DNA of 64,000 nt, from IMG/VR virus record IMGVR_UViG_3300030673_000004, positions 248,001 to 312,000 of that record. One strand, given 5' to 3'. The notes under the pieces are model-generated. The model had not been told where the DNA came from. It saw only the letters and a program-made list of their open reading frames with translations, and did not search any database. The translations under genes were made by a program, and so were the position numbers. Positions 7,144 to 60,232 of this stretch are shown here, in pieces. Each line of letters starts with the position of its first letter. Position 1 is the stretch's first letter.

Positions 7144-10100
7144 ATGCCTACCTTCAATAATATTCCAAGTAATATCCGTAAGAATCTGCTAACACCTATT
7201 GACCTTACTCAGGGCACGGCTTTGCTTCGTTCTAATCTAAGGAACATCGCTAACAGTTTGAGTAATGTAAATGGCTATAAATCATTTCTTCGTCAGGAAT
7301 TGCGTTCTCTTATGCATCCGCGTGAGAACGGCTTTCTTGGTTTGGTAGCTACAAATAATGTCAATGATATATCTATTGATTTAGTAGGTAACCCTATTCC
7401 AAAGATTATCTTTGGTGGTACCTATGTTGACATTGCTGTAGTTTTCAATCAGGATGCTTTTCGTATTGTTCTAGAAAAGGACGCATCTGCTGATGGTGCT
7501 ACTGTTGCCGGGTGGATATTGGCAGTTATTCCATACACACCTTTTGACAAGCTCACTTTTGGTGGGTTCTTAATCTATTTACTTCGCCGTATTGACGATA
7601 TCTTGTCTAAGACAGCAGCGCTAACTCGCTATGACAATAAGCTTGTTCGTCTTCCTGTAAATTCTGTAGGTATCGGCAGAAATGATAGAGCACCTGAGGC
7701 ACCAGATGAAGCTGCTATTGCACAACCACCTCAGCCTATAGAGGCACCTGAGGTAGCCCAAGCTCCTGCTCCAATAGAGAAACCTAAGCCCGAGCCTGTT
7801 ATTCCCGAGCAGCCTTTAGAGGATGAACCTGAAGTTGAGGATGTGGATACTAAGTCTAAGGAATATAAAGCAGCAGCTTCCTTTTCCTTGAGTCCTGATC
7901 TGCAAGAAAGTACAACACCGAAGCATCCTTATGATGCTGTTGGTAATTATGCTACTTTCTTTCAGGTGTTGAAATCTAACTTGAGCGCTGTGCGTAAAGA
8001 GCTAGCTAAATTATCTGGTAATACGTCAGCTAGTGTTAAACTTGATAAATCTGCTATTGTATTTACTGTACAAAATGTACGTGACCCTCAGCTTAGCCTA
8101 TTGACATCTATATCTTTGTTACCTATTGGTCAATTGAACCTGGGTAAGAACAAGGGACCTCGTTTTGAGGTCACCGGTGTATTAGATACTACTTATTATG
8201 ATGGTGAACTTGAGGAGGATGTCGGAAATGTTACACATGTATCTGTAGGAACGTGGAAATGGCTTGCAGAGTATGGTCGTTTGAATACTCTTCAACTAGT
8301 AAATAAAATCGTAGCCGATCTACTTGAAGCCACAACGCATGTTGAACATGCAGCTAACACAAACTCCGACGCTGCTATTGAGACAGAGTCTGAAGCTACA
8401 GCCGCGGATAAGACTAAGCATCCTAAATTGCCTACGGAGGTTAAAGTGCCCGAATCTAAGACTGAGGTTGAGACCTACAAGAAGAAGCTGGCCGAGATCC
8501 GCAAAAAGTCAGAGAAAAAGGGAACGGACACATCGGCCTATAACAAGATAGAGAATAAAACCCCTAAGGCGAAGACAGGTAAAGAATTATCATCTGAGAT
8601 TAATGTACCGGAAGTACCTGATTCTGGAGCAACTACTGTTGCTGACAAAATTAAAGATTCCTTAGAAGAAGCACCTAAAGTAAAACTTCCAAAGAATGCC
8701 GCTATTTTGCCTAAGGTTGTACAGGCTGCAGAAGAAAAGACACCGATTAAACTGCTGCCTTTGAATAAGTGGAATCATAAGAATGCGGATCATTACATAT
8801 ACCAGCCAGGTGGCCATGATTGGAATGGTAATTCATCAGTTATTTCAATCAACAGAGACCCTGATAGTAACTCCTGGTATGTTCGCTTGAACAATATATC
8901 AAAGCAGTTTAAGCAGCTAGTCGGTTCTTTTGTTGAGCCAGTAGCCTCCATTGTTAATGGTCAACTTGTAGATCATAACGGTCAAGGAGATGCCTTTGAA
9001 TCTCCTGAGGCTGCCTACGAGGGTTTACTCTCTGCTCTTAATACGGCTTTATATGGGAATGAGGCTACAGCTAAAGAGTTTGATGAGGACTACACGGCAG
9101 ACTCGCTAACAGACCTTGAACTGAATGACATGGATACAGATTTTGCTGACACCGACAAAAGTCTTGAGGATCCTAATGATGTCGTTGAGGGAGCTGCTGA
9201 CGGGGATGAAGCTGCATCGGAACCACCGGCAACACCAGCAGAGCCTGAGTCGCTTGAAACGTCTGATGGCGATGAAGAGAAGGTTGACATTAACACAGCC
9301 CTTAAATTCCGTGCAGTGCTGCCAGAAGATGCGGACGCTGAGCTCCCATCAAAACTCACGGAGCTGTTTGATGCTATATCTGATGGAAAAGTTCCCGAGG
9401 ATACCGTGATCTTTGTAACATCTGGCACAGGGTTGCGTACCTACACAGTAGGTAAGAATGAGGATGACTCGGTAAGTCTTCGGTGTGAGTACAGTGACGC
9501 TTTGATTCTTGATGGTATGGCGGGTACTCTAGATGACACTGAAGTAACAAAGACATTGGATAAAGCTAAGTCTGAGCAAGAAGATCGTTCTGCTAGTCTT
9601 CGCAACATTGATGAGATTTTTGATGCTTTTGAGACTATCGTTAAAGAAGACACTTTCGATCCCCAGAACTTCAATGACACTGCTGATGGTGATGACGGTG
9701 GCTATACCCTACCATCTGATCGTGATCGCTTAGATGCTGATTTAGCTGATTACGCTAAGAAGTCTTCAGATGATGCTGAAGCTGAAACGGATGAAGAGCC
9801 ATCAGAGGAAGAGGAGGCCGACGCCGCTTTTGCTTCTGCTCTGGTAGATTTGCTCCACTACAAGGAAAACCCGGTGGCTGCTGCTGCTGAGGTGAACGCT
9901 ATCATCCACGCTTTCTCTGGTGATGCTGAGGCGGCTTTCTCCTTGATTGAAGATAAGGGATTGTTTGCCAACGCATCTACATTCCCTGTCATGGAGACCA
10001 AGTTCTACAAACGTGGCGCTCGTCAGTATCCTGCGTATCACATGAGTGTGGCATCTACTACAGAGCCTACTCTAATGTTTGTTCCTCGGACAGGTGCTTA

Positions 10101-46035: not shown

Positions 46036-46092
46036 GTCTAATTAGTTTCGGCAAATAACCTCTGTTTAGACAATGTGCTAATAGAGGAACCA

Positions 46093-49000
46093 ATGCCAAG
46101 AACACATCTACGTGCTGCACAATTAGCTGACGGTGGAACGCAAGGTCAGGCTGTATTAAGAAATGCAGCCGGTGATCTGTACTTCGGTGATGTCGTAACT
46201 GAGGGTATTCAAGGGCCTCAAGGAGATACTGGATCCCAGGGACCGCAAGGTGTTCAAGGTTCAACAGGTGCTACTGGTGCTCAAGGGGCACAAGGGGTAA
46301 CGGGTGCTACCGGGCCTCAAGGTAGCCAAGGAACATCTGGCATAAATGGTTCTATTGGTGCTACTGGTGCTACTGGTGCTCAAGGACCACAAGGCCATAT
46401 AGGTAATACAGGGCTAAAAGGCGATATAGGTGTCCAAGGAGCAACGGGAGCACAAGGGCCTCAAGGAGCTACTGGTATTACGGGTGCGCAAGGAAACCAA
46501 GGTACTATTGGAGCTCAAGGTAGCACAGGTAGCCAAGGCAGCACAGGTGCTACTGGTGCTCAAGGTTCAATAGGGCCTCAAGGTAGCCAAGGTTTAACAG
46601 GTGCAAAAGGTGATATTGGTTCTCAAGGCAACCAGGGTAATCAAGGTGTAATCGGTTTAACGGGAGCACAAGGTGTTCAAGGTGTTCAAGGAACTACCGG
46701 TGCTACTGGCTCTCAAGGAAACCAAGGGTCACAAGGACTAACAGGTAGTGGCTCTCAAGGAGCAACGGGTGCTACCGGACTTCAGGGTAATCAAGGATTC
46801 CAAGGATACTTAGGTAATCAAGGAGCTATTGGTGCTCAGGGAGCTACTGGTTCTCAAGGACTTCAAGGTAGCCAAGGTTTAATCGGAGCGACTGGATCTA
46901 CGGGTGCGCAAGGTACAACAGGTGCTACTGGAGTTCAGGGTAATCAAGGTAATCAGGGTGCTGTTGGAGCACAAGGCTCTCAAGGACATCAGGGTAATCA
47001 AGGATTACAAGGAGCTACAGGGCTTCAAGGTAATCAAGGATTCCAAGGGTTAACGGGTAGTGGAGCGCAAGGTGTACAAGGAGCTACAGGGCTTCAAGGT
47101 AATCAAGGATTCCAAGGGTTAACAGGTAGCGGAACACAAGGAGCTCCGGGTGCTGTTGGTGCTCAAGGGCTTACAGGATCTCAAGGATCTGTCGGCGCTC
47201 AGGGTGTTCAAGGAGCTACCGGTGCTACTGGAGTTCAGGGTAATCAAGGATTCCAGGGTGCTCAAGGAGCTGTTGGTTCTCAGGGTGCCACCGGAGCTGG
47301 CACGCAAGGAGCTACTGGTGCTCAAGGTAATCAAGGTAATCAAGGTGTAATCGGGTTAACTGGTGTTCAAGGTGTTCAAGGAGCAACAGGTAGCCAAGGG
47401 CATCAGGGATTCCAAGGATTCCAAGGATTCCAAGGATTCCAGGGTGTTACGGGCGCTGGTGTTCAAGGAGCTACCGGAGCTCAAGGTACTCAGGGCAACC
47501 AAGGATTCCAGGGTGTTATTGGTTCTCAGGGTGTTCAAGGAACAACTGGATCTACGGGTGCTCAAGGATTACAGGGGAACCAAGGTAATCAAGGTGTAAT
47601 CGGAGCTCAAGGATCTATGGGGTTACAAGGATCTACCGGAGCTACTGGTGCGCAAGGAACACAAGGAACAACCGGATTTACAGGTGCTCAAGGAAATCAA
47701 GGACCTCAAGGTGTAATCGGTGCGACGGGAGCTCAAGGTACTCAGGGCAACCAAGGATTCCAGGGTGTTATTGGTTCTCAGGGTAATCAAGGTAATCAGG
47801 GTGTTCAAGGAGCTACTGGAGCAGGAACACAAGGTGTGCAAGGAACAACTGGATCTACGGGTGCGCAAGGAAATCAAGGTACACAAGGTGCTACTGGTGC
47901 TCAAGGAACACAAGGAAGTACAGGAGCTACGGGTGCGCAAGGTACTGTTGGTGCTACTGGATCTCAGGGAAACCAAGGATTCCAAGGTGTTACTGGGGCC
48001 ACGGGAGTACAAGGTGCTCAGGGTACTATAGGCGTTACGGGTTCTCAAGGATTACAAGGTAATCAAGGAAACCAGGGTACCATCGGTGCAACAGGTGCTC
48101 AAGGAGCTACTGGACTTCAGGGTACTATTGGAGCACAAGGTGCTACTGGTGCTCAAGGAAATCCAGGTAGTCAGGGATCCCAAGGACTAACAGGTAGTGG
48201 AGCACAGGGTGTCCAAGGAGCTACCGGAGCACAAGGTAATCAAGGTGCTACGGGTGCGCAAGGTAATCAAGGTGCTACGGGTGCGCAAGGTACAACAGGT
48301 ACGGCTGGTAATCAAGGTACTACTGGACTTCAGGGTAATCAAGGAAACCAGGGTGCTGCTGGTGATCAAGGCACACAGGGACATCAGGGTACCGTCGGCG
48401 CGACCGGAGCACAAGGTAGCCAAGGACTTACAGGCTCTCAGGGTGCAACTGGATCTACCGGAGCACAAGGTGCAACAGGTGCTCAAGGTGCTACTGGTGC
48501 TCAAGGAAATCCAGGTAGTCAGGGATCCCAAGGACTAACAGGTAGTGGCGCTCAAGGAGCTCAGGGTAACCAAGGAGCACAAGGAATAGCTGCCGTTGGG
48601 ACTATCTATTACCTACACAATACAGCGTCAGACGTAACACCTTACTTAACACTAACACGTACAACACCAGTAGCAAGTGAAACAACAGCAACTTCAACAT
48701 TAGCAACAACAAATACCGATGTAGCTATAGCCGCATTTATATCAACAGCAGGTGATCCAAATATCACAATGATACCTGCAGGTATGCTACAAGCACAGTT
48801 GTATCTATCTGTATCAAATATAGATAGTAATACAACATCACAAATTTCATTCTATAAACGATCAACTGATTCTAGCGAGACACTGTTATTTAGTGCAACA
48901 TCTAACGATATAAATGCAACTACGGCTACATTGTATACACTACAAGCTGTAGTATCCTCTGATATAGTATTGGCTACATCGGATCGACTACTCATAAAAA

Positions 49001-52000
49001 TAACAAGTAGAACAACAAGCACGCTAAGCCCATCAATAACTTTATACTACGATGGTGTATCTCATGCCAGTGTACTATTATCCCCGATTGTTGTTGGTAC
49101 TCAAGGAGCTACCGGATCTCAGGGTAATCAAGGATTCCAAGGTGTTACTGGGGCCACGGGAGTACAAGGTGCTCAGGGAACAACTGGACTACAGGGCAAT
49201 CAAGGTAATCAAGGATTCCAAGGATCTGTCGGTGCTCAGGGAGTCCAAGGAGCAAATGGCCTGCAAGGAACACAAGGATCGGTTGGCGTCCAAGGAGCAA
49301 CAGGTGCGCAGGGAACTATCGGGGCTACGGGACTTCAAGGTACTGCTGGTGTAACGGGAACGCAGGGTGCTCAGGGAGCAACAGGAGCTATTGGTTCTCA
49401 AGGCAACCAGGGTAATCAAGGTAATCAGGGTGCAATAGGTACTACGGGTTCTCAAGGAAACCAAGGTACACAAGGTACACAAGGTGCTACTGGATCTCAA
49501 GGAGCACAAGGAGCACAAGGACTTACTGGGGCTCAAGGTGCAGCAGGCGCTCAAGGTTCTACCGGATCTCAAGGTAATCAAGGGCATCAGGGATTCCAAG
49601 GACTAACCGGTAGTGGAACACAAGGAGCTCAGGGTGCTGTTGGTGCAACGGGTGCTCAGGGCAATCAAGGTAATCAAGGTGTAATCGGACTACAGGGGAC
49701 TCAAGGACTAACAGGTACTGCTGGTGCTCAAGGCAACCAGGGTGCCCTTGGTGCTCAAGGTTCTACAGGTTCTACCGGTGCGCAGGGTACACAAGGTGCA
49801 ACAGGGGATCAAGGTGCTACTGGACTTCAGGGTAATCAAGGAAACCAAGGTACCATCGGTGCAACGGGAGCACAAGGAACAATTGGATCTGCGGGTTCTC
49901 AAGGTAATCAAGGTAATCAAGGTGTAATCGGGTTAACGGGAGCACAAGGAAACCAGGGTGCTGTTGGTGCTCAAGGTACACAAGGTAATCAAGGATCCCA
50001 GGGTACCCTTGGTACTACAGGAGCACAAGGATCTACGGGTGCAACGGGAGCACAAGGTAATCAAGGAGCTCAGGGAGCTATTGGTGCGCAGGGTGCGCAG
50101 GGGGCTACCGGAGCTACTGGACTTCAGGGTACTGCAGGTTCTCAAGGTTCTCAAGGTTCTCAAGGTTCTCAAGGTAATCAAGGTAATCAAGGATCTGTCG
50201 GTGCTCAGGGAACTACTGGGGCTACAGGATCTCAGGGAAACCAGGGTAATCAAGGTACAACAGGAGATCAAGGACTTACTGGTGCTCAAGGTACAACAGG
50301 TGCTCAAGGTAATCAAGGAGCTCAGGGATTCCAAGGAACTATCGGTGTAGCAGGTACGGCAGGATCTCAAGGAAACCAGGGTAATCAGGGATCCCAGGGT
50401 ACAACAGGTACAACGGGAGCACAAGGTAATCAAGGATCCCAGGGAGCTGTTGGTGCTCAAGGGCTTATAGGATCTCAAGGATCTGTCGGTGCTCAGGGAA
50501 CTACTGGGGCTACAGGATCTCAGGGAAACCAGGGTAATCAAGGATTCCAGGGGACAACAGGTGCTCAAGGGGATACTGGAACTACAGGTACAACTGGAGC
50601 ACAAGGGAATCAAGGATTTCAAGGGACTATGGGCGCTACTGGACTTCAGGGTACTACAGGATCTCAAGGGTCTGTCGGTGCTCAGGGAACTACTGGGGCT
50701 ACTGGATCTCAAGGTAATCAGGGTAATCAAGGTTCTACTGGAGCAACAGGTACCCAAGGAGCTACTGGATCTCAAGGTAATCAAGGAAACCAAGGCTTAA
50801 CTGGTGTACAAGGTGCATCAGGAGCTCAAGGCGCTACTGGGCTTCAGGGTACTACTGGATCTCAAGGTAATCAAGGTAATCAAGGAGTTATCGGTTTAAC
50901 AGGACTACAAGGATCTGTCGGCGCTCAAGGTACACAAGGAGCTACCGGAGCTACCGGAGCACAAGGTACTCAGGGTACTCAGGGTAATCAAGGGTTCCAG
51001 GGTGTTATTGGTGCTACTGGATCTCAGGGTAATCAAGGGTTCCAGGGAGATACTGGAGTTCAAGGTTCTACGGGAGCTACTGGATCTCAAGGTAGCCAAG
51101 GTTCTACTGGAGCAACAGGTACTCAGGGGAACCAAGGTAATCAAGGTGTAATTGGAGTTCAAGGTAGCCAGGGGACAACTGGAGCACAAGGTACTCAGGG
51201 GAACCAAGGATTCCAGGGTGTTATTGGTGCTACAGGATCTCAGGGATCTACAGGTGCAACGGGATCTCAGGGGAACCAGGGTAATCAAGGAAACCAAGGC
51301 TTAACTGGTGTACAAGGTGCGGCAGGAGCTCAAGGTAGCCAAGGTTCTACTGGAGCAACAGGTACCCAAGGAGCTACTGGATCTCAAGGTAATCAAGGGT
51401 TCCAGGGGTTCCAGGGTACAACAGGTGTCGGCGCTCAAGGCGCTCAAGGTACGCAGGGTGTTCAAGGTGCAACCGGCGCAGGTTCCCAAGGACCTCAAGG
51501 AGCTACCGGAGCACAAGGAAGCCAAGGAACGCAGGGGAACCAGGGAGTGGCAGGGAGCGGCAGTGGTACTACAACTCTTACATCAGTTGCACATTTCGCG
51601 CTGACAGAGACAGTTACAAACACAGTAGCATATTTCTATACAGAGCGTGCCCTTGGTACAACGCAAGACGACAAGCAGCGTTCAGGAAATAGTAGTGGTA
51701 TGAGTTATGCATCTGCCTGTTCTGGCTGGGTGTGCCCATTCACAGGTACTATCACACGAGCTGTATTTGTAATTGCGGCTGCTGGAGTAAACAACGGAAC
51801 AGTCACATATCCATGCGCATACAACGTAGCACTGTATCGTGTAGGTTTTGCAACTGAGCAAGATGCGGCTGTCAACAGTGGTTCCCCTAATACAATTTCA
51901 ACAACACTTGCCTCCGGTGTTGGAACTTTCTCGGTAGCCGCTGTTAATACTCGCTCAGTAGTAACGCTTAGCATAGCTGTAACAGCCGGTGATGTTCTGG

Positions 52001-52089
52001 CACTAAAGTTTGTTAATGGCTCCGGCGCGTCAACCGTTGCAATGTCTCAAATGGCATTTGTTTCACTTGTTATTGAAGGAACAATCTAA
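46093..52089 (+). CDS. giant collagen-like fibre protein
   Basis: GAGGA RBS before ATG 46093; two G-X-(Q/T) tracts separated and capped by globular domains. Confidence 0.9.
46204..48585 (+). repeat. collagen-coding 9-bp period repeat, tract 1
   Basis: GGN-NNN-CAR/ACN period, about 795 codons. Confidence 0.95.
49096..51567 (+). repeat. collagen-coding 9-bp period repeat, tract 2
   Basis: same period, about 820 codons. Confidence 0.95.
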
Positions 52090-55013
52090 TGGCGTGTACA
52101 TATAGCTTTAGAAATACAACTACATCGGATATTACGCTAAATAACTCATTAGTTATCCAGGCACTATCTACAAAAACAGTATTCGATGTAGATACAATGA
52201 CAGTAACCGATGCTTGGTCAATCGAGCATTCTCTAGATGGAGCTGGATCAGGAACAACAGAGATAGCTCAATTACTATCTACAGGTAGTCTTGTATTTGT
52301 AATAGATGGTATAGATCAAACGTCTGATTCTTTTTATCCCGCATGGAAGACATTCTTTGGAAGCATCGTTGCTACAAATGTGGCTGAAAGTGTTCACGTT
52401 TTAGATCAAGCTGGGTATATAGGAACAGCAGCACCAAAAATAAAAACAAATGTAGTAACTACTGCTAATGCTGTAGATAGGACAGGATTTTTTATTGGCC
52501 CTGTCAATACAACGAATACACTTACAGTATCATCTACAGGTACATTAATATCACAGTGTGATCGACAACTACTATATTGCATGCAACCAGGTGTAACACC
52601 GGGTCATTGGTTTCAGTATATAGACAGTTACGGGTCAACTATGACACCGGCAAGTAATTCTGCACTGTCTACATCAGTTGTATCCTCTGGAAATCTAGCA
52701 GTCGCGATCACATTACTTGGTGATACAACATCGCACTACCCGTATGCCGGTGTAGCGTTTGACTTTACAGACAATGGGTCCGCAACAACTGCTAACAAAG
52801 CTACATTTAATGTATCTGCTTATACAGGAATAACAATTACTTATAAATCCTCAACTGTTATTAAACTACAACTAGAAGGTAATGCTGACTCCGACGGAGC
52901 TAACTGGTTCTACTCGCTGCCAATTGCATCAACATCTAGTACAGTGACACTGACATGGGCTCAGTTTTCACAACCCACATGGGTATCTACTACACAAACA
53001 CGAGCAATTCCTACAGCAGCACTAGCAAGTATCAAGTTCCAATATGATACAGCGCAAGCAGCAACTTCATTTACTGTATATAAAGTAGCATTTACAGGTA
53101 CAGGACCATTCATGGTCTCGCCTACAGCGCTCTCAAAAAAGTATAGCGTTCAAGCAGTACAACTTATAAATCAATGGTTTAATCAATTCTACTATGAAGA
53201 TACTACAGGAACATTAGGTAGAATAGCATGGGTTAGTGGATCTAATGTAGATACAACAATCACAGTATCTGAGGGTATCGGTTATGGCATGCTGTTAGCT
53301 ATAATAGCAGCAGCGTCACCCGGTGTTAGCGAGACATATCGTAAACGATTTGATCATATGTGGGCATTTTACCAGCTAAATAAAGATGGTAACGGCCTAA
53401 TGAATTGGAAGGTACAAAACTTTAATGCTACCGTGGTTGGTTCTGGTGCAGCACCGGACGGGGATCTTGATGTTGCTAAAGCACTACTTCTAGCATATGA
53501 ACGTTTCATGGATGTATCTTATTTAATAGCTGCTAGAAAACTAATGGCATCTATTTGGACATATGAAATTATATCAAAAGTAACAACGTCAGGAGGAACT
53601 AGATATCTTATTGCGCCGGGTGACAGCTACTCTAGTTTCTTCAATCCTAGCTATGCTAAGCTCGCAGCAATAAAATTATGTGCATATTATGATAATGTAA
53701 CTACACATTATTGGAATACTTTATATACAGATACTCTTTGGTTTCTAAATGCAAATCAAACATCAGTAGGGTCATCGTGCTTCTATCTACCATCTAATTG
53801 GTGCGATAAGAATGGTACACCTGTAATAGGTAACTCATCACTAGGCTTTGGCTGGGATGCTTGTCGAGTATTATACCACGTAGCAGAAGCATTCTACTGG
53901 TTTGGTGATTCTGCAGCACGTGCATATCTACAAACAATAGCAAGTACTTCATTAGCCACAACACTCATATCGTCTCCAATGAGTTTACAGCTAACAATTA
54001 AACCGGATGGAACATCAGGTCAATCATATAACTCAACATCTTCTACATGGTCTGCTACAGCTACAAGTGACTACAATACAGCCGCTATAGGAACTATTCT
54101 AACAGCACTTACAACAACATCAACATTCACAGAAGCGCAAGCAGAATCTGTTCTAGACACAATTCTTGCATATACAACAGAAAATACAGACTACTTTAGA
54201 TTAGCACTTAAGGCTTTTATACTTTCTGTTATTACTGGAGTATCTACCAGATATGCCAAAGATGCTGGATCGGCATCAGCTATAGCATACATAGTAAATG
54301 TTGGCGCTCCTTATGGATCACAAACAGGGAATGCCCAACTAGCTATAATGGCCGATGGTAGTGGTGTTCAAGTAAGAACATACTCTAACGGGACATGGAC
54401 GACAAGTTCAATTAGTGGCTCTCAAGGAGCACAAGGAAACCAGGGGCCTCAAGGTACATCCGGTGGACCTCAGGGTAACCAAGGTACAACAGGAGCACAA
54501 GGGCCTCAAGGTACGGCTGGTGTGCAAGGAGTACCGGGCGCTCAAGGTAGTCAGGGAAACCAGGGTAATCAAGGACCCGCTAATGGTGCCCAAGGAGCTA
54601 CTGGAGCACAAGGGGCTCAGGGACCTCAAGGATTTCAAGGTGCCCAAGGAATCCAGGGAGCAGGAGTACAGGGGGCTCAAGGACCTCAAGGTAACCAAGG
54701 CCCTGCTAATGGGCCACAAGGAACTACAGGATCTCAGGGAAACCAAGGAGATCAAGGTGTAATTGGCACACAAGGAGTACCGGGCGCTCAAGGTAGTCAG
54801 GGAAACCAGGGTAATCAAGGAGCTAAAGGAGCACAAGGTACTCAGGGAGTACAGGGCACAACGGGAGCTCAGGGAGTACAAGGTTCAATAGGAACCCAAG
54901 GTGCGACGGGAGCACAAGGTACTCAGGGTAATCAAGGATTCGCGAGCATTGTAGTTGTCTCAACTATGCCAAGTACTCCAGCAGCAAACACACTTTATAT
55001 AGTGACAACCTAG
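52089..55013 (+). CDS. CBM11-like + glycoside hydrolase family 8 + collagen-like fibre protein
   Basis: VSEGIGYGML, GLMNW, AAPDGDLDVAKALLLA, FNPSY, GWDACR (GH8); upstream YAGVAFDF..YTGITITYKS..LTWAQFSQP.W; G-X-Q tail; ends MPSTPAANTLYIV. Confidence 0.8.
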   Translation: MACTYSFRNTTTSDITLNNSLVIQALSTKTVFDVDTMTVTDAWSIEHSLDGAGSGTTEIAQLLSTGSLVFVIDGIDQTSDSFYPAWKTFFGSIVATNVAESVHVLDQAGYIGTAAPKIKTNVVTTANAVDRTGFFIGPVNTTNTLTVSSTGTLISQCDRQLLYCMQPGVTPGHWFQYIDSYGSTMTPASNSALSTSVVSSGNLAVAITLLGDTTSHYPYAGVAFDFTDNGSATTANKATFNVSAYTGITITYKSSTVIKLQLEGNADSDGANWFYSLPIASTSSTVTLTWAQFSQPTWVSTTQTRAIPTAALASIKFQYDTAQAATSFTVYKVAFTGTGPFMVSPTALSKKYSVQAVQLINQWFNQFYYEDTTGTLGRIAWVSGSNVDTTITVSEGIGYGMLLAIIAAASPGVSETYRKRFDHMWAFYQLNKDGNGLMNWKVQNFNATVVGSGAAPDGDLDVAKALLLAYERFMDVSYLIAARKLMASIWTYEIISKVTTSGGTRYLIAPGDSYSSFFNPSYAKLAAIKLCAYYDNVTTHYWNTLYTDTLWFLNANQTSVGSSCFYLPSNWCDKNGTPVIGNSSLGFGWDACRVLYHVAEAFYWFGDSAARAYLQTIASTSLATTLISSPMSLQLTIKPDGTSGQSYNSTSSTWSATATSDYNTAAIGTILTALTTTSTFTEAQAESVLDTILAYTTENTDYFRLALKAFILSVITGVSTRYAKDAGSASAIAYIVNVGAPYGSQTGNAQLAIMADGSGVQVRTYSNGTWTTSSISGSQGAQGNQGPQGTSGGPQGNQGTTGAQGPQGTAGVQGVPGAQGSQGNQGNQGPANGAQGATGAQGAQGPQGFQGAQGIQGAGVQGAQGPQGNQGPANGPQGTTGSQGNQGDQGVIGTQGVPGAQGSQGNQGNQGAKGAQGTQGVQGTTGAQGVQGSIGTQGATGAQGTQGNQGFASIVVVSTMPSTPAANTLYIVTT

Positions 55014-55682: not shown

Positions 55683-56921
55683 ATGGAACTTCCTACTGTT
55701 TCTATCTTTACACCGACGCATAACCCTAAGCGCCTCATTGAAGCATACCAATCTATCAAAGATCAAGATTTCCTTGAATGGGTAATTTTATACAACAATG
55801 GAGCAACACCTATTGGCTTTGATGATCCACGTGTCAAGGAAGTTATTGATACCCACGACGGTGATGACAGCGCCTGGATTGGACGACTAAAACATGAAGC
55901 CTGTGCTTCCTGTATAGGTGATATCCTACTAGAACTAGATCACGATGATCTACTGATGCCCTTAGCGCTAGAGCATGTACGCGAAGCCTTCTTGGACGTT
56001 GAGATTGGTTTTGTCTACTCAAACACTATCCATGCAAATGCCGATCTAACCACGTCATGCCCACGTTTTGACGAACGCTACGGATGGAAGTATCGTCAGG
56101 TAAATGTCAATGGCAACTTACTTGATGAGCACATCTCGTTTGATCCGCTGCCCACAACAATCTCACGTATCTGGTACGCCCCTAACCACCTAAGGGCATT
56201 CCGTCGTTCTTTATATGAACAGATTGGTGGATACAATGTCGGTATGCGTGTACTTGACGACCTGGACCTCATGTGCCGTCTATATGCTATTACAAAATTC
56301 CGGCATATCAATGAAGGTCTTTACATCTATAGATATGAAGATAATACCTTCGCTAAAGATGGAATTAACCAAGAGATTCAAAACAATGTCTACCGTATTC
56401 ATGATATGTACATTGAGTCTCTTGCCGAGTCGTGGTCTACAGCGTGTGGCTTGCGCAAGATTGAACTCGGTGGCAGACTAGCGGCACGTCCAGGCTTTGA
56501 AACTGTGGACCTGTTTGATGCAGATATCATAGCAGATCTTAACAGTATCTGGCCCTTCAAGGATAACTCTGTTGGCGTCATCCGAGCTTACGATGTTTTT
56601 GAGCATCTTAAGAACCCCATATTCGTCATGAACGAACTGCATCGTGTGCTCGCTCCAGGTGGATACGCTATCATTCAAGTACCTAGCACAGAAGGTACAG
56701 GGGCAGCCTCGGATCCTACTCATGTGTCGTGGTGGAATGAGCGATCCTTTACATACTACACCCAAGCAGAGCGTGCTAAATACCTACCAGACTTCAAGGG
56801 TAGGTTCCAAGCACTACGTTTGTTCACTACAGAACCTGATGCAGAACGCTGCTGCTGGGTGCAGGCACACTTGATGAAGCTGGATAACGCTATTCGCGTT
56901 CCTGGAGAAGTCTTGATCTAA
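55683..56921 (+). CDS. glycosyltransferase family 2 fused to class I SAM methyltransferase
   Basis: VSIFTPTHN, LELDHDD (DxD); C-terminal IELGG, DL..IWPF.DNSV, DVFEHL, RVL.PGG, DPTH. Confidence 0.85.
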   Translation: MELPTVSIFTPTHNPKRLIEAYQSIKDQDFLEWVILYNNGATPIGFDDPRVKEVIDTHDGDDSAWIGRLKHEACASCIGDILLELDHDDLLMPLALEHVREAFLDVEIGFVYSNTIHANADLTTSCPRFDERYGWKYRQVNVNGNLLDEHISFDPLPTTISRIWYAPNHLRAFRRSLYEQIGGYNVGMRVLDDLDLMCRLYAITKFRHINEGLYIYRYEDNTFAKDGINQEIQNNVYRIHDMYIESLAESWSTACGLRKIELGGRLAARPGFETVDLFDADIIADLNSIWPFKDNSVGVIRAYDVFEHLKNPIFVMNELHRVLAPGGYAIIQVPSTEGTGAASDPTHVSWWNERSFTYYTQAERAKYLPDFKGRFQALRLFTTEPDAERCCWVQAHLMKLDNAIRVPGEVLI

Positions 56922-57003: not shown

Positions 57004-57345
57004 CTACAGAATTTGGCCAGCATTAAGAGCATCTGCGGCTCGCAGTAAGGACTGTAAAAGTTTCCAGACATAAGCGTAGCTATTGAAGATTCGATCACGA
57101 TAAGATACATGCGGATCATAGCTGATTACTGCACCGATCAGTTCCTGGAGCTCTTCGAGGGCTACCTGTGGCCCATCAAATGTCTCTTTTGTCACGATAT
57201 CTATCACACTACCATCGTGGTTACCTCGCGATCCATGTATGAAGTATTTATACTTAGTGGCTAAGTTATCCTGAACAGTGATTATCTGCGTTCCACCATC
57301 GCGCAGGCCATCCAGACGTGTCAACTCAAGCGTGTGTGCTGTCAT
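57004..57345 (-). CDS. hypothetical protein
   Basis: 113-aa ORF with LRDGGT motif. Confidence 0.65.
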   Translation of the reverse strand: MTAHTLELTRLDGLRDGGTQIITVQDNLATKYKYFIHGSRGNHDGSVIDIVTKETFDGPQVALEELQELIGAVISYDPHVSYRDRIFNSYAYVWKLLQSLLRAADALNAGQIL

Positions 57346-57379
57346 AAAGAACTATTTACAACAAAATACGACGAAGACC

Positions 57380-57408
57380 TTGACACCCATACAGTTTTGA
57401 AGTATATT
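57380..57408 (+). promoter_or_regulatory. sigma70-type promoter for the large ncRNA
   Basis: TTGACA-17-TATATT. Confidence 0.85.
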
Positions 57409-57414
57409 TTATTC

Positions 57415-58181
57415 ATCGGCACGACGGCACGACGAGAGGCCGGAGCCCAACCGCAGCCACATAAGGGGCGGTTTTTTACGAGAAGAAGAGTAACTGAGGT
57501 TACTCACAAACAAACAAACAAAATCACCTGCTGTCAAGACGGCTGGTGCCTGACTTCAACCATGGAGAGCATGAAAATGCATTGGCCGTAGCTACTTAAC
57601 AAAACAACACCTATGAGCTCTTAACATAAACATGTAAAGGAGACTTTCGGATATGCCATTCCTTTAGCTACTTAACAAAACAACACCTATGAGCCTTCAT
57701 CATGAGGTTCCACGAAAACCGAGTGATGCCTGACAAAAAACCTAGGGAGGAACTATACAAATGCCGCCTACGTGATCTTACTTTGTGTGTTTTTTGTTTT
57801 TCAACGAATAGAAACTTGAGCTAGTTGATGAGATAAACCAGTTGTTGAAAGGTGCAAAACCAATGCGATGTAGGTAAAAATACCCAGCGTTACTTAGGTT
57901 GCTAACGAGAGTTAAAAATGACTAGGATGTTGCTCCAGCATTAGCCGAAACCTAGTGAGGGAGCACCTCCAACCTCTACTGAGAAAGTCAAACGTTCAGC
58001 CGATTTTCAGTAGTTGTAAGTTTAATAATTGAAACGTGCATATGTCCTCGTGGCTTCTCAGGACTGGCATTTGCTAAAATAAATTGCCCGAGAAGTAAAA
58101 GCCGCATAAGATACTTACAAGTAGTTTAATAGCTCTTATACAGCTATTAAACCATAACGGTAAGCTAGCTTAGCGGCTTTT
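57415..58181 (+). ncRNA. large ornate ncRNA candidate (~770 nt), family unknown
   Basis: largest ORF-free gap in the window, own promoter, at least 10 stems including pseudoknots, 3' closing stem with U-rich tail. Confidence 0.7.
57589..57694 (+). repeat. perfect 30-bp direct repeat x2 around a 46-nt insert
   Basis: TAGCTACTTAACAAAACAACACCTATGAGC at 57589-57618 and 57665-57694. Confidence 0.95.
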
Positions 58182-58201
58182 GCATTTTATAAACATTTAA
58201 C

Positions 58202-58230
58202 GTGACATACATACAAAATTAATGTATATT
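58202..58230 (+). promoter_or_regulatory. sigma70-type promoter (cassette-family spacer)
   Basis: GTGACA-TACATACAAAATTAATG-TATATT. Confidence 0.8.
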
Positions 58231-58276
58231 GTATTCAAGCAAGAGCTAAACAAATAAGCACAAGGAGCACAGGCCA

Positions 58277-58981
58277 GTGCCACAAGAAAATCCCGGCAAG
58301 CGTGTCTACATCAATATCCTGAACAAGTGCAATGAGCGATGTCCCTTCTGCTGTATGTACAGTGGACCTGAGAAAAACACGATCATGCCGTTTTCTACAT
58401 TTGAAGATATTCTCCAGAACGAACGTACAGGCCCTCTTGTTGAAGTTCAACTTGAGGGAGGTGAGCCTTTACTGCACCCAAATCTATACCTGTTCTTAGA
58501 ATATATCCACTACCTAGATGTACCTAAGATCATCATTACCACAAATGGTATTCTTCTGCGCAAACATCTGCCTAAACTGACGGAGTTTGCAAGCAGAACA
58601 CAAACAACTCTCGTGATTAAAGTTAGTGTAAACTCGCACCTCCTCAAGCAGCCGACTAAACTTGGCATGGATCACTTTGAGCAGCTCAAAGATCTATACC
58701 TCGCTACCGAATTCCTCCCGAATGTAATCATCCTGTTCAATGTTCGACTGCGAGCAAATCATGAAGATGATGATATTGTAGAAGGGCTGCGCAGAACAGA
58801 CTTGCTGAAACACTCCAATGTCTTCCAGCTACAATCTTACGGAAGATACTCAGAACAAACCGAATATGAAAAGCCTGTAATCGTACAGAACATTAAACAA
58901 TGGAACATCTACTCCAGTGATGGTATCTGTTTCGGGCAGGATCTAGTTGCGAGAAGTAATCATGAAAAGGATGTGAGGTAA
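58277..58981 (+). CDS. radical SAM protein
   Basis: CNERCPFC, GGEP, TTNG. Confidence 0.85.
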   Translation: MPQENPGKRVYINILNKCNERCPFCCMYSGPEKNTIMPFSTFEDILQNERTGPLVEVQLEGGEPLLHPNLYLFLEYIHYLDVPKIIITTNGILLRKHLPKLTEFASRTQTTLVIKVSVNSHLLKQPTKLGMDHFEQLKDLYLATEFLPNVIILFNVRLRANHEDDDIVEGLRRTDLLKHSNVFQLQSYGRYSEQTEYEKPVIVQNIKQWNIYSSDGICFGQDLVARSNHEKDVR

Positions 58982-60029
58982 TGGTAACTATGAAATTTGC
59001 ACCACTACGTGAAGCTCGCCAGGAATCACACAATGTTGAGGAATACAAACTGCTCCCATTCATGTTTGAGTCAGGACCACGCCAGGTCTACAGTAACATG
59101 AATCTGTCCATCATGATTGATGATTACTGCAATGCGAACTGTCAATTCTGTGTAGCTCAACTACGCTACGAAAACCGAGCTAAGCAGTACCAGAAGCCCA
59201 AGATTCACAATGATGACACCTATTTCGCACGTCTGGATGAGATGCTTTCGTTTCTGGCACCGCTCAATCCTAGCATCAGCATCACGGGTGGCGAACCCAG
59301 CAAGTCCCGCAGGCTCCCGCAGATTCTTGAACTTAGCAATAAGCACGGTTACCGCAAGCGGACCCTGACGACGAATGGCAGTGGACTCTTTGATGAACTG
59401 AACGGCAAAACTATGCTGCAGCACATCATTGATAACAAGTTCCAGCACTTGAATATCAGCAAAGCCCACTATGATGAAGAGACCAATCGGCGTATCATGC
59501 AATATGATGCTAGTACCGGATATTGCTCGAATGAAATACTGAGCCGAATTGCAACTTATGCCCTGGCAAACAATCTGCGTCCTCGTATGAGTTGTGTGCT
59601 TCTCAAGAGTGGTATATCTACCCTGGAAGACATGATTCATTATATGGAGTTCTATCAGAGTCTGGGTATGGACAATGTCATCTTTCGTGAGCTCATGGAT
59701 TATGACAAAGTTTCTATGGACAACGCCCCAAAACTAGCGTTCAATCAGGAAAACAAAGTGTATCTTGCTGATCTGTGGAAGCAGCTTGACGGAGATACTC
59801 GGTTCACTCCTGTGCGCAACCTGATGGGCTACTACTATTATGTAGAAGTCTACAAGTATCAGAACGTAGACACATGTGTTCTGAAGGTGCCAACCTTGTC
59901 AAGCTGTACAACGAAAAGGCTAAGCACCCGGAAGTTGTCTACGAGATGGTGTTTCATCCCAATGGCAACCTTAATGGCAGTTGGGTTGATTCCGAAGATA
60001 TTCTTCAGAAATACCAGGGAACTCTGTAA
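58981..60029 (+). CDS. radical SAM protein with apparent frameshift near 59870
   Basis: CNANCQFC, TGGEP, TTNG; a natural-looking C-terminus lies in another frame ending TAA 60029 just before the next RBS. Confidence 0.75.
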
Positions 60030-60040
60030 AAGGACAATAC

Positions 60041-60232
60041 ATGTTTATTGCTGTTGGGCCGTATGCAGAAAACACAAGCGATCAGTTACCCGATGTCATC
60101 ATTGATGTGTGCTCTGATCTTACCTATCAAGAACGCTGCAGGTATACAGAATTAATTGCAGACGCAATCAATAGAGGACTACCTAAAAACTTGTCCAGGG
60201 AAGACTTACAGCCAAAAGTACAAAAAGTTTAA
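60041..60232 (+). CDS. hypothetical protein
   Basis: AAGGA RBS. Confidence 0.6.
   Translation: MFIAVGPYAENTSDQLPDVIIDVCSDLTYQERCRYTELIADAINRGLPKNLSREDLQPKVQKV

What the first reader, a model, noticed from the sequence alone, without database searches (positions are those of the whole stretch)
57589..57694. Perfect 30-nt repeat pair flanking a 46-nt hairpin inside the large RNA
Seen: TAGCTACTTAACAAAACAACACCTATGAGC occurs twice. The insert between the copies can fold (AAAGGA...TCCTTT). TGCCTGAC also recurs on either side (about 57547 and 57727), and a UG/U-rich tract (57781-57800) is complementary in composition to the A/C-rich repeat core and the ACAAACAAACAAACAAAA linker. Inference: a repeat-insert-repeat module that could be a processed guide, a protein-sponge site, or simply a recent duplication.
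Basis: partly seen in the sequence, partly recalled or inferred. Interest (0 to 1): 0.6.

Follow-up and report, generated by a model that had tools for sequence, protein, structure and literature searches.

The report
Tandem mini-ORF modules in phage RNA
The perfect 30-base repeat is the recently homogenised core of two sister modules (ribosome-binding site, four-codon mini-ORF, stop codon, conserved tail) inside an orphan ~770-base transcription unit of a 375-kb jumbo phage. It is not a CRISPR-like guide, and it points to a ribosome-engaging phage RNA loosely comparable to the lambda bar minigenes.

Summary
A 30-nt exact direct repeat lies at 57589-57618 and 57665-57694, with 46 nt between the copies. 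It occurs only here in the 375,537-bp jumbo phage genome.

It sits in a 931-nt gene-free region. That region has a phage early-type sigma-70 promoter (57380-57408) and a large terminator hairpin (58093-58192), and it matches no Rfam family.

A homologous RNA exists in a second phage lineage (L028/L029/L030), whose neutral sites are saturated relative to this phage. It also carries the element twice.

Every copy begins with the stop codon of a mini-ORF of 4 to 8 codons that has a Shine-Dalgarno sequence at normal spacing: MHWP* and MPFL* here, MPFL* and MKYPMPFL* in the relative. A third paralogous module (MPPT*, 57745-57775) follows in both phages.

Between lineages the conserved parts are the SD, the ATG, the mini-ORF, the stop and CTACTTA. 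The A/C-rich middle of the repeat is lineage-specific.

Different sub-tracts are identical between copies in each lineage. The duplication is therefore old, and the perfect identity reflects recent gene conversion.

The insert hairpin and the pairing with the U/G tract are no better than shuffled controls. The CRISPR/guide reading is refuted, and sponge motifs are not enriched.

Best reading, with moderate confidence: tandem ribosome-loading mini-cistrons. No RNA data exist.

The parts
57380..57408 (+). Promoter of the RNA: TTGACA, 17-nt spacer, TATATT. It is a diverged member of the phage's repeated early-type promoter motif. The transcription start is inferred at about 57415.
   Evidence: 11 of 12 consensus positions. 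One search finds 32 genome copies of the motif TTGACA-N3-ATACAAAATTAATGTATATT. By my own count, this one matches 22 of 30 motif positions. It is conserved in L029 (76% over 57375-57411).
57412..57563 (+). Poorly conserved 5' leader. It holds GC-rich hairpins, an 8-nt tandem duplication GGCACGAC x2 (57418-57433), a terminator-like hairpin with a U6 run (about 57449-57477) and an (ACAA)n linker (57506-57523).
   Evidence: Identity to L029 is 35%. In run X5 one 8-nt copy is absent and the linker has an extra ACAA unit.
57564..57591 (+). Module 1: SD GGAGAG (57564-57569), 7 nt, then ATG CAT TGG CCG TAG (57577-57591; MHWP*). Two further in-frame ATGs lie upstream at 57562 and 57571.
57589..57618 (+). 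Repeat copy 1: TAG stop, conserved CTACTTAAC, lineage-specific A/C-rich middle, then conserved CCTATGAG.
   Evidence: The core is predicted unpaired (probability 0.93).
57619..57664 (+). The 46-nt 'insert'. Its 3' two-thirds are the SD (AAGGAG, 57637-57642), a 10-nt spacer and the first four codons of mini-ORF 2.
   Evidence: The hairpin is not significant.
57637..57667 (+). Module 2: SD AAGGAG, 10 nt, then ATG CCA TTC CTT TAG (57653-57667; MPFL*).
   Evidence: ATGCCATTYCTTTAGCTACTTA is 21 of 22 identical to both L029 copies.
57665..57694 (+). Repeat copy 2, identical to copy 1.
57720..57800 (+). Module 3, a paralog: TGCCTGAC (57727), AACC, SD GGGAGG (57745-57750), 10 nt, then ATG CCG CCT ACG TGA (57761-57775; MPPT*), then TCTTACTT and the U/G-rich tract (57781-57800).
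   Evidence: It is conserved in L029 as ATGCCGCCCACGTGA with an SD.
57851..57877 (+). Possible weaker fourth module: GAAAGG, AACCA, then ATG CGA TGT AGG TAA (MRCR*). L029 has ATG CGT TGG TAA (MRW*) at the aligned place.
   Evidence: The SD is weak, so this part is tentative.
57970..58100 (+). The most conserved block of the RNA, a 3' domain with two conserved hairpins (about 57972-58016 and 58039-58073).
   Evidence: 80% identity to L029 against 34-38% at neutral sites. The alifold model shows two compensatory pairs in the second hairpin.
58093..58192 (+). Long terminator hairpin (AAAAGCCGC ... GCGGCTTTT) followed by a U-rich tail. This is the inferred 3' end of the RNA.
   Evidence: compensatory changes GCCGC/GCGGC to GUCCC/GGGAC in L029. 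Self-inverted match.
58202..58230 (+). The next copy of the phage early promoter motif, which drives the radical-SAM gene pair. This is a separate transcription unit.

Best explanation
The 30-nt repeat is not an independent element. It is the part of two paralogous 'mini-cistron' modules that has recently been homogenised.

Each module has five parts:
- a Shine-Dalgarno sequence;
- a 7-10-nt spacer;
- an ATG followed by three sense codons;
- a stop codon (TAG, the first three bases of the repeat);
- a conserved tail, CTACTTAAC ... CCTATGAG, around a variable, single-stranded middle.

Three such modules sit in tandem, at 57564-57618, 57637-57694 and 57745-57800. They lie in the 5' half of a ~770-nt promoter-to-terminator unit of a jumbo phage. 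Its 3' half is a strongly conserved structured domain.

Shown:
- the anatomy of the modules;
- their uniqueness in the genome;
- their conservation in a second lineage despite saturated neutral sites;
- the mosaic, lineage-specific identity tracts, which point to gene conversion.

Inferred:
- Host ribosomes bind and translate these mini-ORFs early in infection.
- Either this loading protects the untranslated RNA from RNase E or Rho, as mini-ORFs do in the EHEC LEE4 leader.
- Or the mini-ORFs act in trans like lambda bar minigenes, tying up ribosomes or tRNA. Five of the six mini-ORF peptides contain Met-Pro, a slow first peptide bond.
For: - Repeat exact, and only two copies in the genome.
- Promoter and terminator bracket the region, with no long conserved ORF on either strand.
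- SD-preceded 4-codon ORFs at 57577, 57653 and 57761: 3 observed against 0.39 in dinucleotide shuffles, P = 0.0045.
- The genome-wide density of such mini-ORFs is 0.065 per kb per strand, against 3.8 per kb here. This is the only cluster of three or more in 375 kb.
- The homologous RNA in L028/L029/L030 has SD-preceded MPFL*, MKYPMPFL* and MPPT* at the aligned places. The 12 extra bases ahead of the MPFL codons in the second keep the frame.
- Four-fold degenerate sites between the two phages are only 34-38% identical. The islands ATGCCATTYCTTTAGCTACTTA (21 of 22) and AAATGCCGCCYACGTGAT (17 of 18) are conserved all the same.
- The only differences inside those two islands are third-codon positions (TTC/TTT, CCT/CCC).
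- Module 1 keeps its SD, ATG, length and TAG although its codons differ (MHWP against MPFL). This argues that translation matters rather than the peptide.
- The identical tracts differ by lineage: 30 nt from the TAG onward here, and 22 nt ending at CTACTTA in L029. In run X5 both copies share a different 3' third.
- The module region is weakly structured and the repeat cores are predicted unpaired.
- Precedents for mini-ORFs with strong SDs that stabilise RNAs or poison translation: PMC8708949, and references 20-21 in PMC2490762.
Against: - No RNA-seq or ribosome-profiling data. No listed run is RNA, so transcription, RNA ends and translation are all inferred.
- Only two diverged lineages are known. 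The covariation and synonymous-site evidence rests on a handful of positions.
- The two third-position changes also preserve an SD:anti-SD pairing (G-C to G-U), so they do not prove coding.
- The three modules are paralogs, so the enrichment statistics are not three independent events.
- The function of the conserved post-stop tail (CTACTTAAC, CCTATGAG) is unexplained by this model.
- Classic toxic minigenes are most potent with two codons and UAA stops (PMC8708949). These have four codons and TAG or TGA.
- The phage has no Pth or RF-like gene that would tie it to peptidyl-tRNA metabolism.
- The X5 reconstruction comes from one 101-nt contig.
Confidence: 0.5

Rival explanations
1. RNA- or protein-binding (sponge) sites. 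The two identical single-stranded A/C-rich tracts would titrate a host RNA-binding protein (Hfq, Crc, CsrA, S1 or Rho) or a G/U-rich host sRNA. The nearby GGAG motifs would be incidental.
For: - The repeat cores are predicted unpaired (0.93 and 0.81, against 0.43 for the whole RNA).
- They contain no G over about 20 nt.
- Both copies change together in run X5, as expected if both must match one partner.
Against: - The A/C-rich middle is absent from both copies in L029, where the middles differ from each other.
- There is no AAnAAnAA motif, and GGA, ANGGA and ACA are not enriched.
- What is conserved is SD, ATG and stop at ribosome-binding spacing.
Confidence: 0.12
2. Non-functional by-product. 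The modules would be relics of gene starts or regulatory cassettes duplicated by recombination in a hyperplastic region. Gene conversion rather than selection would keep them similar.
For: - The locus is a hot spot of gene turnover. The 113-aa ORF is present only here, the downstream cassettes differ between lineages, and more distant relatives lack the RNA.
- The phage carries many repeated promoter cassettes.
- Small tandem duplications and microsatellite variation occur in the leader.
Against: - Neutral sites between the two lineages are saturated (34-38% identity at four-fold sites). The module islands are 94-95% identical across lineages and the flanking leader is only 35%.
- Gene conversion within a genome cannot explain conservation between genomes.
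Confidence: 0.12
3. Real micro-protein genes. Either the tetrapeptides themselves are active, or stop-codon read-through produces 15-38-residue peptides in which the repeat encodes LLNKTTPMS.
For: - The nine bases after the stop are conserved (CTA CTT AAC = LLN).
- Reading L029 copy 1 through its TAG by hand gives a hydrophobic 38-residue frame.
- An odd 96-nt tRNA-like gene with a possible Lys/stop-reading loop lies at G000:92265-92360.
Against: - Beyond LLN the read-through frames are not conserved. Module 3 in L029 stops after one more codon.
- The genome reads well in the standard code: about 90% coding, with TAG ending 53 long ORFs. Nothing shows recoding.
- Module 1 encodes a different tetrapeptide.
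Confidence: 0.05
4. CRISPR-like mini-array or another processed guide, read as repeat-spacer-repeat.
For: The geometry fits superficially, with 30-nt identical direct repeats and a 46-nt unique insert. The repeats evolve in concert.
Against: - The insert is not a free spacer. It carries an SD and mini-ORF homologous to the sequence upstream of copy 1 and conserved in L029.
- The whole 931-nt region is identical in three assemblies and the repeat-insert-repeat is identical in two more.
- There is no Cas domain in the flanking ORFs.
- The repeat is found nowhere else in the viral or metagenome collections.
- The repeat has no internal hairpin.
Confidence: 0.02

Closest known systems
Lambda bar minigenes (barI/barII) and synthetic toxic minigenes
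   Same: These are phage-encoded, SD-preceded ORFs of only a few codons inside an otherwise non-coding stretch. Their translation, not their product, is what matters: it causes peptidyl-tRNA drop-off and starves the cell of tRNA (references 20-21 cited in PMC2490762; summary in PMC8708949).
   Different: From my own knowledge, bar ORFs have two codons (AUG AUA UAA). Here there are four codons ending in TAG or TGA, arranged as three tandem paralogous modules with a conserved post-stop tail. They sit in a dedicated ~770-nt RNA with a conserved structured 3' domain. There is no sequence similarity, and toxicity is untested.
Stabilising mini-ORFs and ribosome-binding 5' stabilisers (EHEC LEE4 six-codon mini-ORF, LEE1 and axe-txe two-codon minigenes)
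   Same: A strong SD plus a tiny ORF loads ribosomes and protects the RNA from RNase E, acting in cis (PMC8708949).
   Different: Those elements sit singly in the leaders of protein-coding mRNAs. Here three sit in tandem in an RNA with no downstream cistron before its terminator.
CRISPR mini-arrays carried by phages
   Same: Two identical ~30-nt direct repeats flank a unique segment of similar length.
   Different: The 'spacer' is conserved and is paralogous to the flanking sequence. The repeat has no stem, no cas gene is nearby, and the repeat begins with a stop codon of a mini-ORF.
Type III toxin-antitoxin RNA repeats (ToxI) and phage pseudo-ToxI mimics
   Same: Phage-borne tandem RNA repeats of about 30-36 nt that can expand or homogenise (my own knowledge, not checked here).
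   Different: ToxI units are contiguous and are cut by an adjacent ToxN-type endoribonuclease. Here the repeats are interspersed, only two are identical, and the neighbours scanned carry no ToxN-like or other nuclease domain.
T4-type PeSL mobile regulatory cassettes
   Same: Repeated promoter-proximal sequences in a hyperplastic region of a large phage genome (my own knowledge). This phage has 32 copies of one early promoter motif.
   Different: The 30-nt repeat is not part of the promoter cassette and does not flank a gene.

Membership tests
CRISPR (mini-)array | Identical direct repeats of 23-55 nt separated by a unique spacer of similar length | tested here: met
   30-nt exact repeats with a 46-nt insert.
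CRISPR (mini-)array | The spacer is an acquired, free-varying sequence, unrelated to the flanks and variable between strains or relatives | tested here: not met
   The 3' part of the insert (SD, ATG, mini-ORF) is homologous to the sequence upstream of copy 1 and is conserved in L029. The insert is identical in every independent assembly fetched.
CRISPR (mini-)array | Associated cas genes, or the same repeat in a host or phage array elsewhere | tested here: not met
   There are no Cas domains in the ORFs scanned between 52089 and 62862. The repeat is absent from the rest of the genome and from the viral and metagenome collections.
Minigene / mini-ORF element (lambda bar, LEE4, axe-txe type) | A Shine-Dalgarno-like sequence at functional spacing upstream of a start codon | tested here: met
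   GGAGAG +7, AAGGAG +10 and GGGAGG +10 nt before the ATG. In L029: AAGGAGG +7, GGGAGG +7 and GGAGA +7.
Minigene / mini-ORF element (lambda bar, LEE4, axe-txe type) | An ORF of only a few sense codons ending in an in-frame stop | tested here: met
   Four codons in all three modules here, and 4, 8 and 4 in L029. Enriched over shuffles and over the rest of the genome.
Minigene / mini-ORF element (lambda bar, LEE4, axe-txe type) | Ribosomes actually initiate there, and translation or SD occupancy produces the effect (RNA protection, or peptidyl-tRNA accumulation rescued by Pth) | not testable with these tools
   No RNA or ribosome-profiling run holds this sequence.
Protein-sponge sRNA (CsrB/RsmZ type; CrcZ type) | Many GGA motifs in hairpin loops, or repeated AAnAAnAA motifs | tested here: not met
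   GGA 9 against 11.2 expected, ANGGA 4 against 3.7, AAnAAnAA 0 against 0.9.
Type III TA antitoxin RNA (ToxI-like) | Contiguous tandem repeats upstream of an endoribonuclease toxin gene | tested here: not met
   The repeats are separated by 46 nt of unrelated sequence. The neighbours scanned are a methyltransferase, an orphan 113-aa ORF and radical-SAM enzymes.
Any Rfam family | A covariance-model match at or near the gathering score | tested here: not met
   No hits at gathering thresholds in the window. Only chance-level hits (E above 1) in 57200-58400.

The most novel reading that the evidence does not exclude
The RNA is a dedicated early-expressed 'ribosome trap'. It would be an array of Met-Pro-initiated mini-cistrons, each followed by an unstructured tail, used by a jumbo phage to hold or drain host ribosomes, release factors or tRNAs during takeover, or to decoy a ribosome-dependent defence nuclease. 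The conserved 3' domain would provide stability or a second activity. That would be a new class of phage host-takeover RNA.
Probability: 0.15. Interest if true: 0.8.

Novelty: new variant of a known kind. Interest (0 to 1): 0.45.

Why it matters
Large orphan non-coding regions in jumbo phages are mostly unexplained. This one resolves into a conserved, promoter-to-terminator RNA whose 5' half is a tandem array of ribosome-binding mini-cistrons and whose 3' half is a conserved structured domain.

If ribosomes do load there, it would be a natural and evolutionarily maintained counterpart of the lambda bar minigenes. The biological purpose of those minigenes has remained unclear since their discovery. 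This case would offer a tractable one: three modules and clear mutations to make.

It is also a caution for sequence scans. A perfect repeat-unique-repeat pattern can mimic a CRISPR mini-array while being the product of gene conversion between paralogous translation-initiation modules.

Tried and rejected
- **Rfam.** Gathering thresholds on the whole window and permissive E-values on 57200-58400 gave nothing meaningful. There are no tRNA or tmRNA genes in the window.
- **Public phage records.** DNA similarity of the RNA and of 14 kb around it found no match.
- **Exact-pattern scans.**
  - The 30-mer and the 20-mer found nothing in viral contigs.
  - The 20-mer in metagenome contigs found the same phage (L026) plus two chance marine hits (L025, L027).
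  - An 18-mer from the 3' domain gave seven chance hits.
  - The module 22-mer gave none in viral contigs.
  - Two patterns in bacterial and archaeal genomes gave none.
- **Relatives sought through neighbouring proteins.**
  - The 113-aa ORF and the first radical-SAM gene have no relatives in viral contigs.
  - Methyltransferase relatives at 58-64% amino-acid identity (L012-L015, G001, L039, L040) lack the RNA.
  - Relatives of the 366-aa protein at 67-70% identity (L041-L047) also lack it by nhmmer and blastn.
  - The 982-nt gap in L047 is unrelated.
- **Strain-level copies.** ENA and JGI assemblies are 100% identical, so they are uninformative.
- **RiPP-precursor idea** (small ORFs upstream of radical-SAM enzymes). 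No ORF of 20 or more residues is conserved between the two lineages.
- **Intramolecular pairing of the U/G tract with the repeat.** Not better than shuffles.
- **Insert hairpin.** Not better than shuffles.
- **Hfq/Crc, CsrA and MazF-decoy motif ideas.** No enrichment.
- **Phage-encoded Pth or RF-1-domain protein.** None found.
- **RNA evidence.** No RNA runs were available.
- **Papers.** Two papers (PMC1170711, PMC212743) are not held in the library.

Full report
**1. Where the finding lies**

The window is bases 248001-312000 of a 375,537-bp IMG/VR phage record with direct terminal repeats. Its G+C content is 42.8%. The genome holds 34 tRNA genes, all outside the window, and the window itself has none. 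Nearly all genes in the window are on the + strand.

The finding sits in a 931-nt stretch without a credible gene, 57346-58276. The neighbours are:
- upstream, a glycosyltransferase/methyltransferase gene (55683-56921) and an orphan 113-aa ORF on the minus strand (57004-57345);
- downstream, two radical-SAM genes (58277-60105).

**2. The observation**

The 30-mer occurs exactly at 57589-57618 and 57665-57694, with 46 nt between the copies.
- The chance expectation for such a pair in 64 kb is about 2e-9.
- The genome has no third copy at up to 3 mismatches on either strand.
- TGCCTGAC is at 57547 and 57727.

- The insert folds no better than shuffles (z = -0.76), and its best fold does not use AAAGGA/TCCTTT.
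- The U/G tract at 57781-57800 pairs with the repeat at -10.0 kcal/mol, against -8.3 +/- 2.4 for shuffled repeats.

**3. The transcription unit**

A motif TTGACA-N3-ATACAAAATTAATGTATATT occurs 32 times in the genome.
- One copy at 58203 precedes the radical-SAM genes.
- A diverged copy at 57380-57408 faces the gene-free region. It scores 11 of 12 on the sigma-70 consensus. By my own count it matches 22 of 30 motif positions.

A long hairpin with a U-rich tail at about 58093-58192 ends the region. This gives an inferred RNA of about 770 nt.
- It folds somewhat better than shuffles (z = -3.7).
- It matches no Rfam family.
- No ORF of 20 or more codons in it is conserved in the relative described below.

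**4. Related sequences**

The same phage, with an identical intergenic region, is present in several ENA and JGI assemblies. No strain variation was seen among these.

Public runs from freshwater, wastewater and bioreactors hold variants at about 95-97% identity.

A truly diverged homolog was reached through a methyltransferase variant (P0006). Contigs L028, L029 and L030 carry a ~780-nt gene-free stretch at the same place. It has the same promoter and terminator and a colinear series of conserved blocks.

At four-fold degenerate sites of the two flanking orthologs these phages are only 34-38% identical. Neutral sequence is therefore saturated, and any conserved non-coding block is under selection. 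Identity by block:

| Block | Identity to L029 |
|---|---|
| 5' leader | 35% |
| Three module regions | 56-64%, with near-perfect islands |
| 3' domain 57970-58100 | 80% |

More distant relatives of the clade lack the RNA. Exact-pattern scans of the viral, metagenome and prokaryote collections found no other member.

**5. What the repeat is**

In L029 the element is also present twice, but a different tract is identical there: ATGCCATTTCTTTAGCTACTTA, 22 nt. Lining up all copies at the TAG shows a common module.

| Copy | SD | Spacer (nt) | Mini-ORF | Stop |
|---|---|---|---|---|
| Window copy 1 | GGAGAG | 7 | MHWP | TAG |
| Window copy 2 | AAGGAG | 10 | MPFL | TAG |
| L029 copy 1 | AAGGAGG | 7 | MPFL | TAG |
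| L029 copy 2 | GGGAGG | 7 | MKYPMPFL | TAG |
| Window module 3 | GGGAGG | 10 | MPPT | TGA |
| L029 module 3 | GGAGA | 7 | MPPT | TGA |

- In the four TAG copies the stop is the first three bases of the repeat. CTACTTA(A/G)C follows, then a variable middle of 8-17 nt, then CCTAT(G/T)AG.
- In L029 copy 2 the 12 bases ahead of the MPFL codons, relative to copy 1, keep the reading frame.
- Module 3 follows in both phages: ATGCCGCC(T/C)ACGTGA, then TCTTACTT (TGTTAACTT in L029) and the U/G-rich tract.
- Its upstream part (TGCCTGAC ... AACC ... GGAG) resembles that of module 1. The modules are therefore mosaic paralogs.

The 46-nt 'insert' is thus mostly the ribosome-binding site and coding part of the second mini-ORF.

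**6. Is the mini-ORF pattern more than chance?**

- The RNA has three SD-preceded ORFs of at most 9 codons, against 0.39 in dinucleotide shuffles (P = 0.0045).
- Genome-wide, SD plus ATG plus at most 4 codons plus stop occurs 0.065 times per kb per strand, against 3.8 per kb here.
- No other place in the genome has three within 400 nt.
- The modules are paralogs, so these are not independent events. Their retention in both lineages against saturated neutral divergence is the stronger argument.
- The only substitutions inside the two best-conserved mini-ORFs are third-codon positions. These also keep a weak SD:anti-SD pairing, so that point is only suggestive.
- Module 1 has different codons but keeps its SD, ATG, length and TAG. 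This favours selection for translation or ribosome binding rather than for a peptide.

**7. Why the 30 nt are perfect**

- Outside the 30 nt, the 5' flanks of the two copies are only weakly alike and the 3' flanks diverge within about ten bases.
- In L029 the identical tract is shifted to the 5' side.
- In run X5, a strain about 96% identical elsewhere, a 101-nt contig shows both copies sharing the first 24 bases and then a common different ending. This is my reconstruction from the listed differences and a loose end, and it rests on a single contig.
- Together these indicate an old duplication with repeated short-tract gene conversion, not a recent duplication.
- The A/C-rich middle that makes the repeat conspicuous is specific to this lineage. 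It is predicted to be single-stranded.

**8. Mechanism**

The most economical reading is a tandem array of ribosome-loading mini-cistrons on an early phage RNA. Two known behaviours of such elements are documented.
- Protection of an RNA from RNase E by ribosomes held at a strong SD and mini-ORF (EHEC LEE4, axe-txe; PMC8708949).
- Trans-acting inhibition of translation through peptidyl-tRNA drop-off, as for lambda bar and synthetic minigenes (references in PMC2490762; PMC8708949).

I cannot tell which applies.
- Five of the six mini-ORF peptides contain Met-Pro, and MPPT has Pro-Pro. From general knowledge of proline peptide-bond formation, this would slow the ribosome at the start.
- The phage encodes no Pth or RF-1-domain protein.
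- The role of the conserved post-stop tail is unexplained. It would lie in the mRNA channel of a terminating ribosome (inference).

**9. Rivals**

- The CRISPR/guide reading is refuted by the nature and conservation of the 'spacer', the absence of cas genes and the absence of the repeat elsewhere.
- Sponge readings find no enriched motif, and the A/C tract is not conserved across lineages.
- A neutral relic is contradicted by conservation over saturated divergence.
- Read-through micro-proteins are not supported, because the frames beyond LLN are not conserved and the genome uses the standard code.

**10. Limits**

There are no RNA data of any kind, only two diverged lineages, and no known host. 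Helices in the 3' domain rest on a two-sequence alignment, which inflates apparent covariation.

Noticed in passing
window 723, 19958, 38948(-), 39682(-), 41345(-), 58203, 62860; 32 copies genome-wide: A highly conserved sigma-70-like promoter cassette, TTGACA-N3-ATACAAAATTAATGTATATT. Many copies are followed by an equally conserved TGTTCTTGTCACCTCAA leader. It resembles the mobile early-promoter cassettes (PeSL) of T4-type phages.
   Followed up: partly
window 57004-57345 (-): An orphan 113-aa ORF lies between the methyltransferase gene and the RNA promoter. It is absent from the L028/L029/L030 lineage and from G001. It has no Pfam or NCBIfam hit and no relative in the viral contigs or phage records.
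   Followed up: partly
window 58277-60105; L029 3037-4352; L011 (PP511379.1) 8228-10032: The cassette downstream of the conserved RNA differs between lineages. Here it is two radical-SAM genes with weak MoaA/viperin-like matches, shared at 65% amino-acid identity with the 73-kb Dulem virus 40. In L029 it is an LRR-like 140-aa protein plus a different radical-SAM gene.
   Followed up: partly
L029 5363-6664 (L028 10479-11780): A TnpB/IS605 OrfB-like gene (433 aa, Cas12f1-like TNB domain) is inserted in the relative between the 82-aa ORF and the 366-aa gene. It is absent from the window.
   Followed up: no
window 57418-57433 and 57506-57523: There is an 8-nt tandem duplication GGCACGAC x2 and an (ACAA)n microsatellite in the RNA leader. 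Both are length-polymorphic in the run X5 strain (one copy only; one extra ACAA).
   Followed up: partly
G000:C1:92265-92360 (outside the window): A 96-nt tRNA-like gene in the 34-tRNA cluster has a 6-nt anticodon loop and a long variable arm. ARAGORN reads it as Lys or stop.
   Followed up: no
window 57449-57477: A terminator-like hairpin plus U6 lies about 35-60 nt into the RNA in this lineage only. L029 has the hairpin without the U run. It could be an early attenuator.
   Followed up: no
window 46075-55013: A 2004-aa ORF is followed by a 974-aa protein with a glycosyl-hydrolase-8 domain and collagen-like repeats, probably tail-fibre or depolymerase genes just upstream of the variable region.
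   Followed up: no
window 57589-57594 and 57665-57670; L029 2421 and 2515: The first six bases of every repeat copy, TAGCTA, are a palindrome. The two copies could pair with each other (6-7 bp, used in the MFE folds) or bind a dimeric factor. Its significance is unknown.
   Followed up: partly
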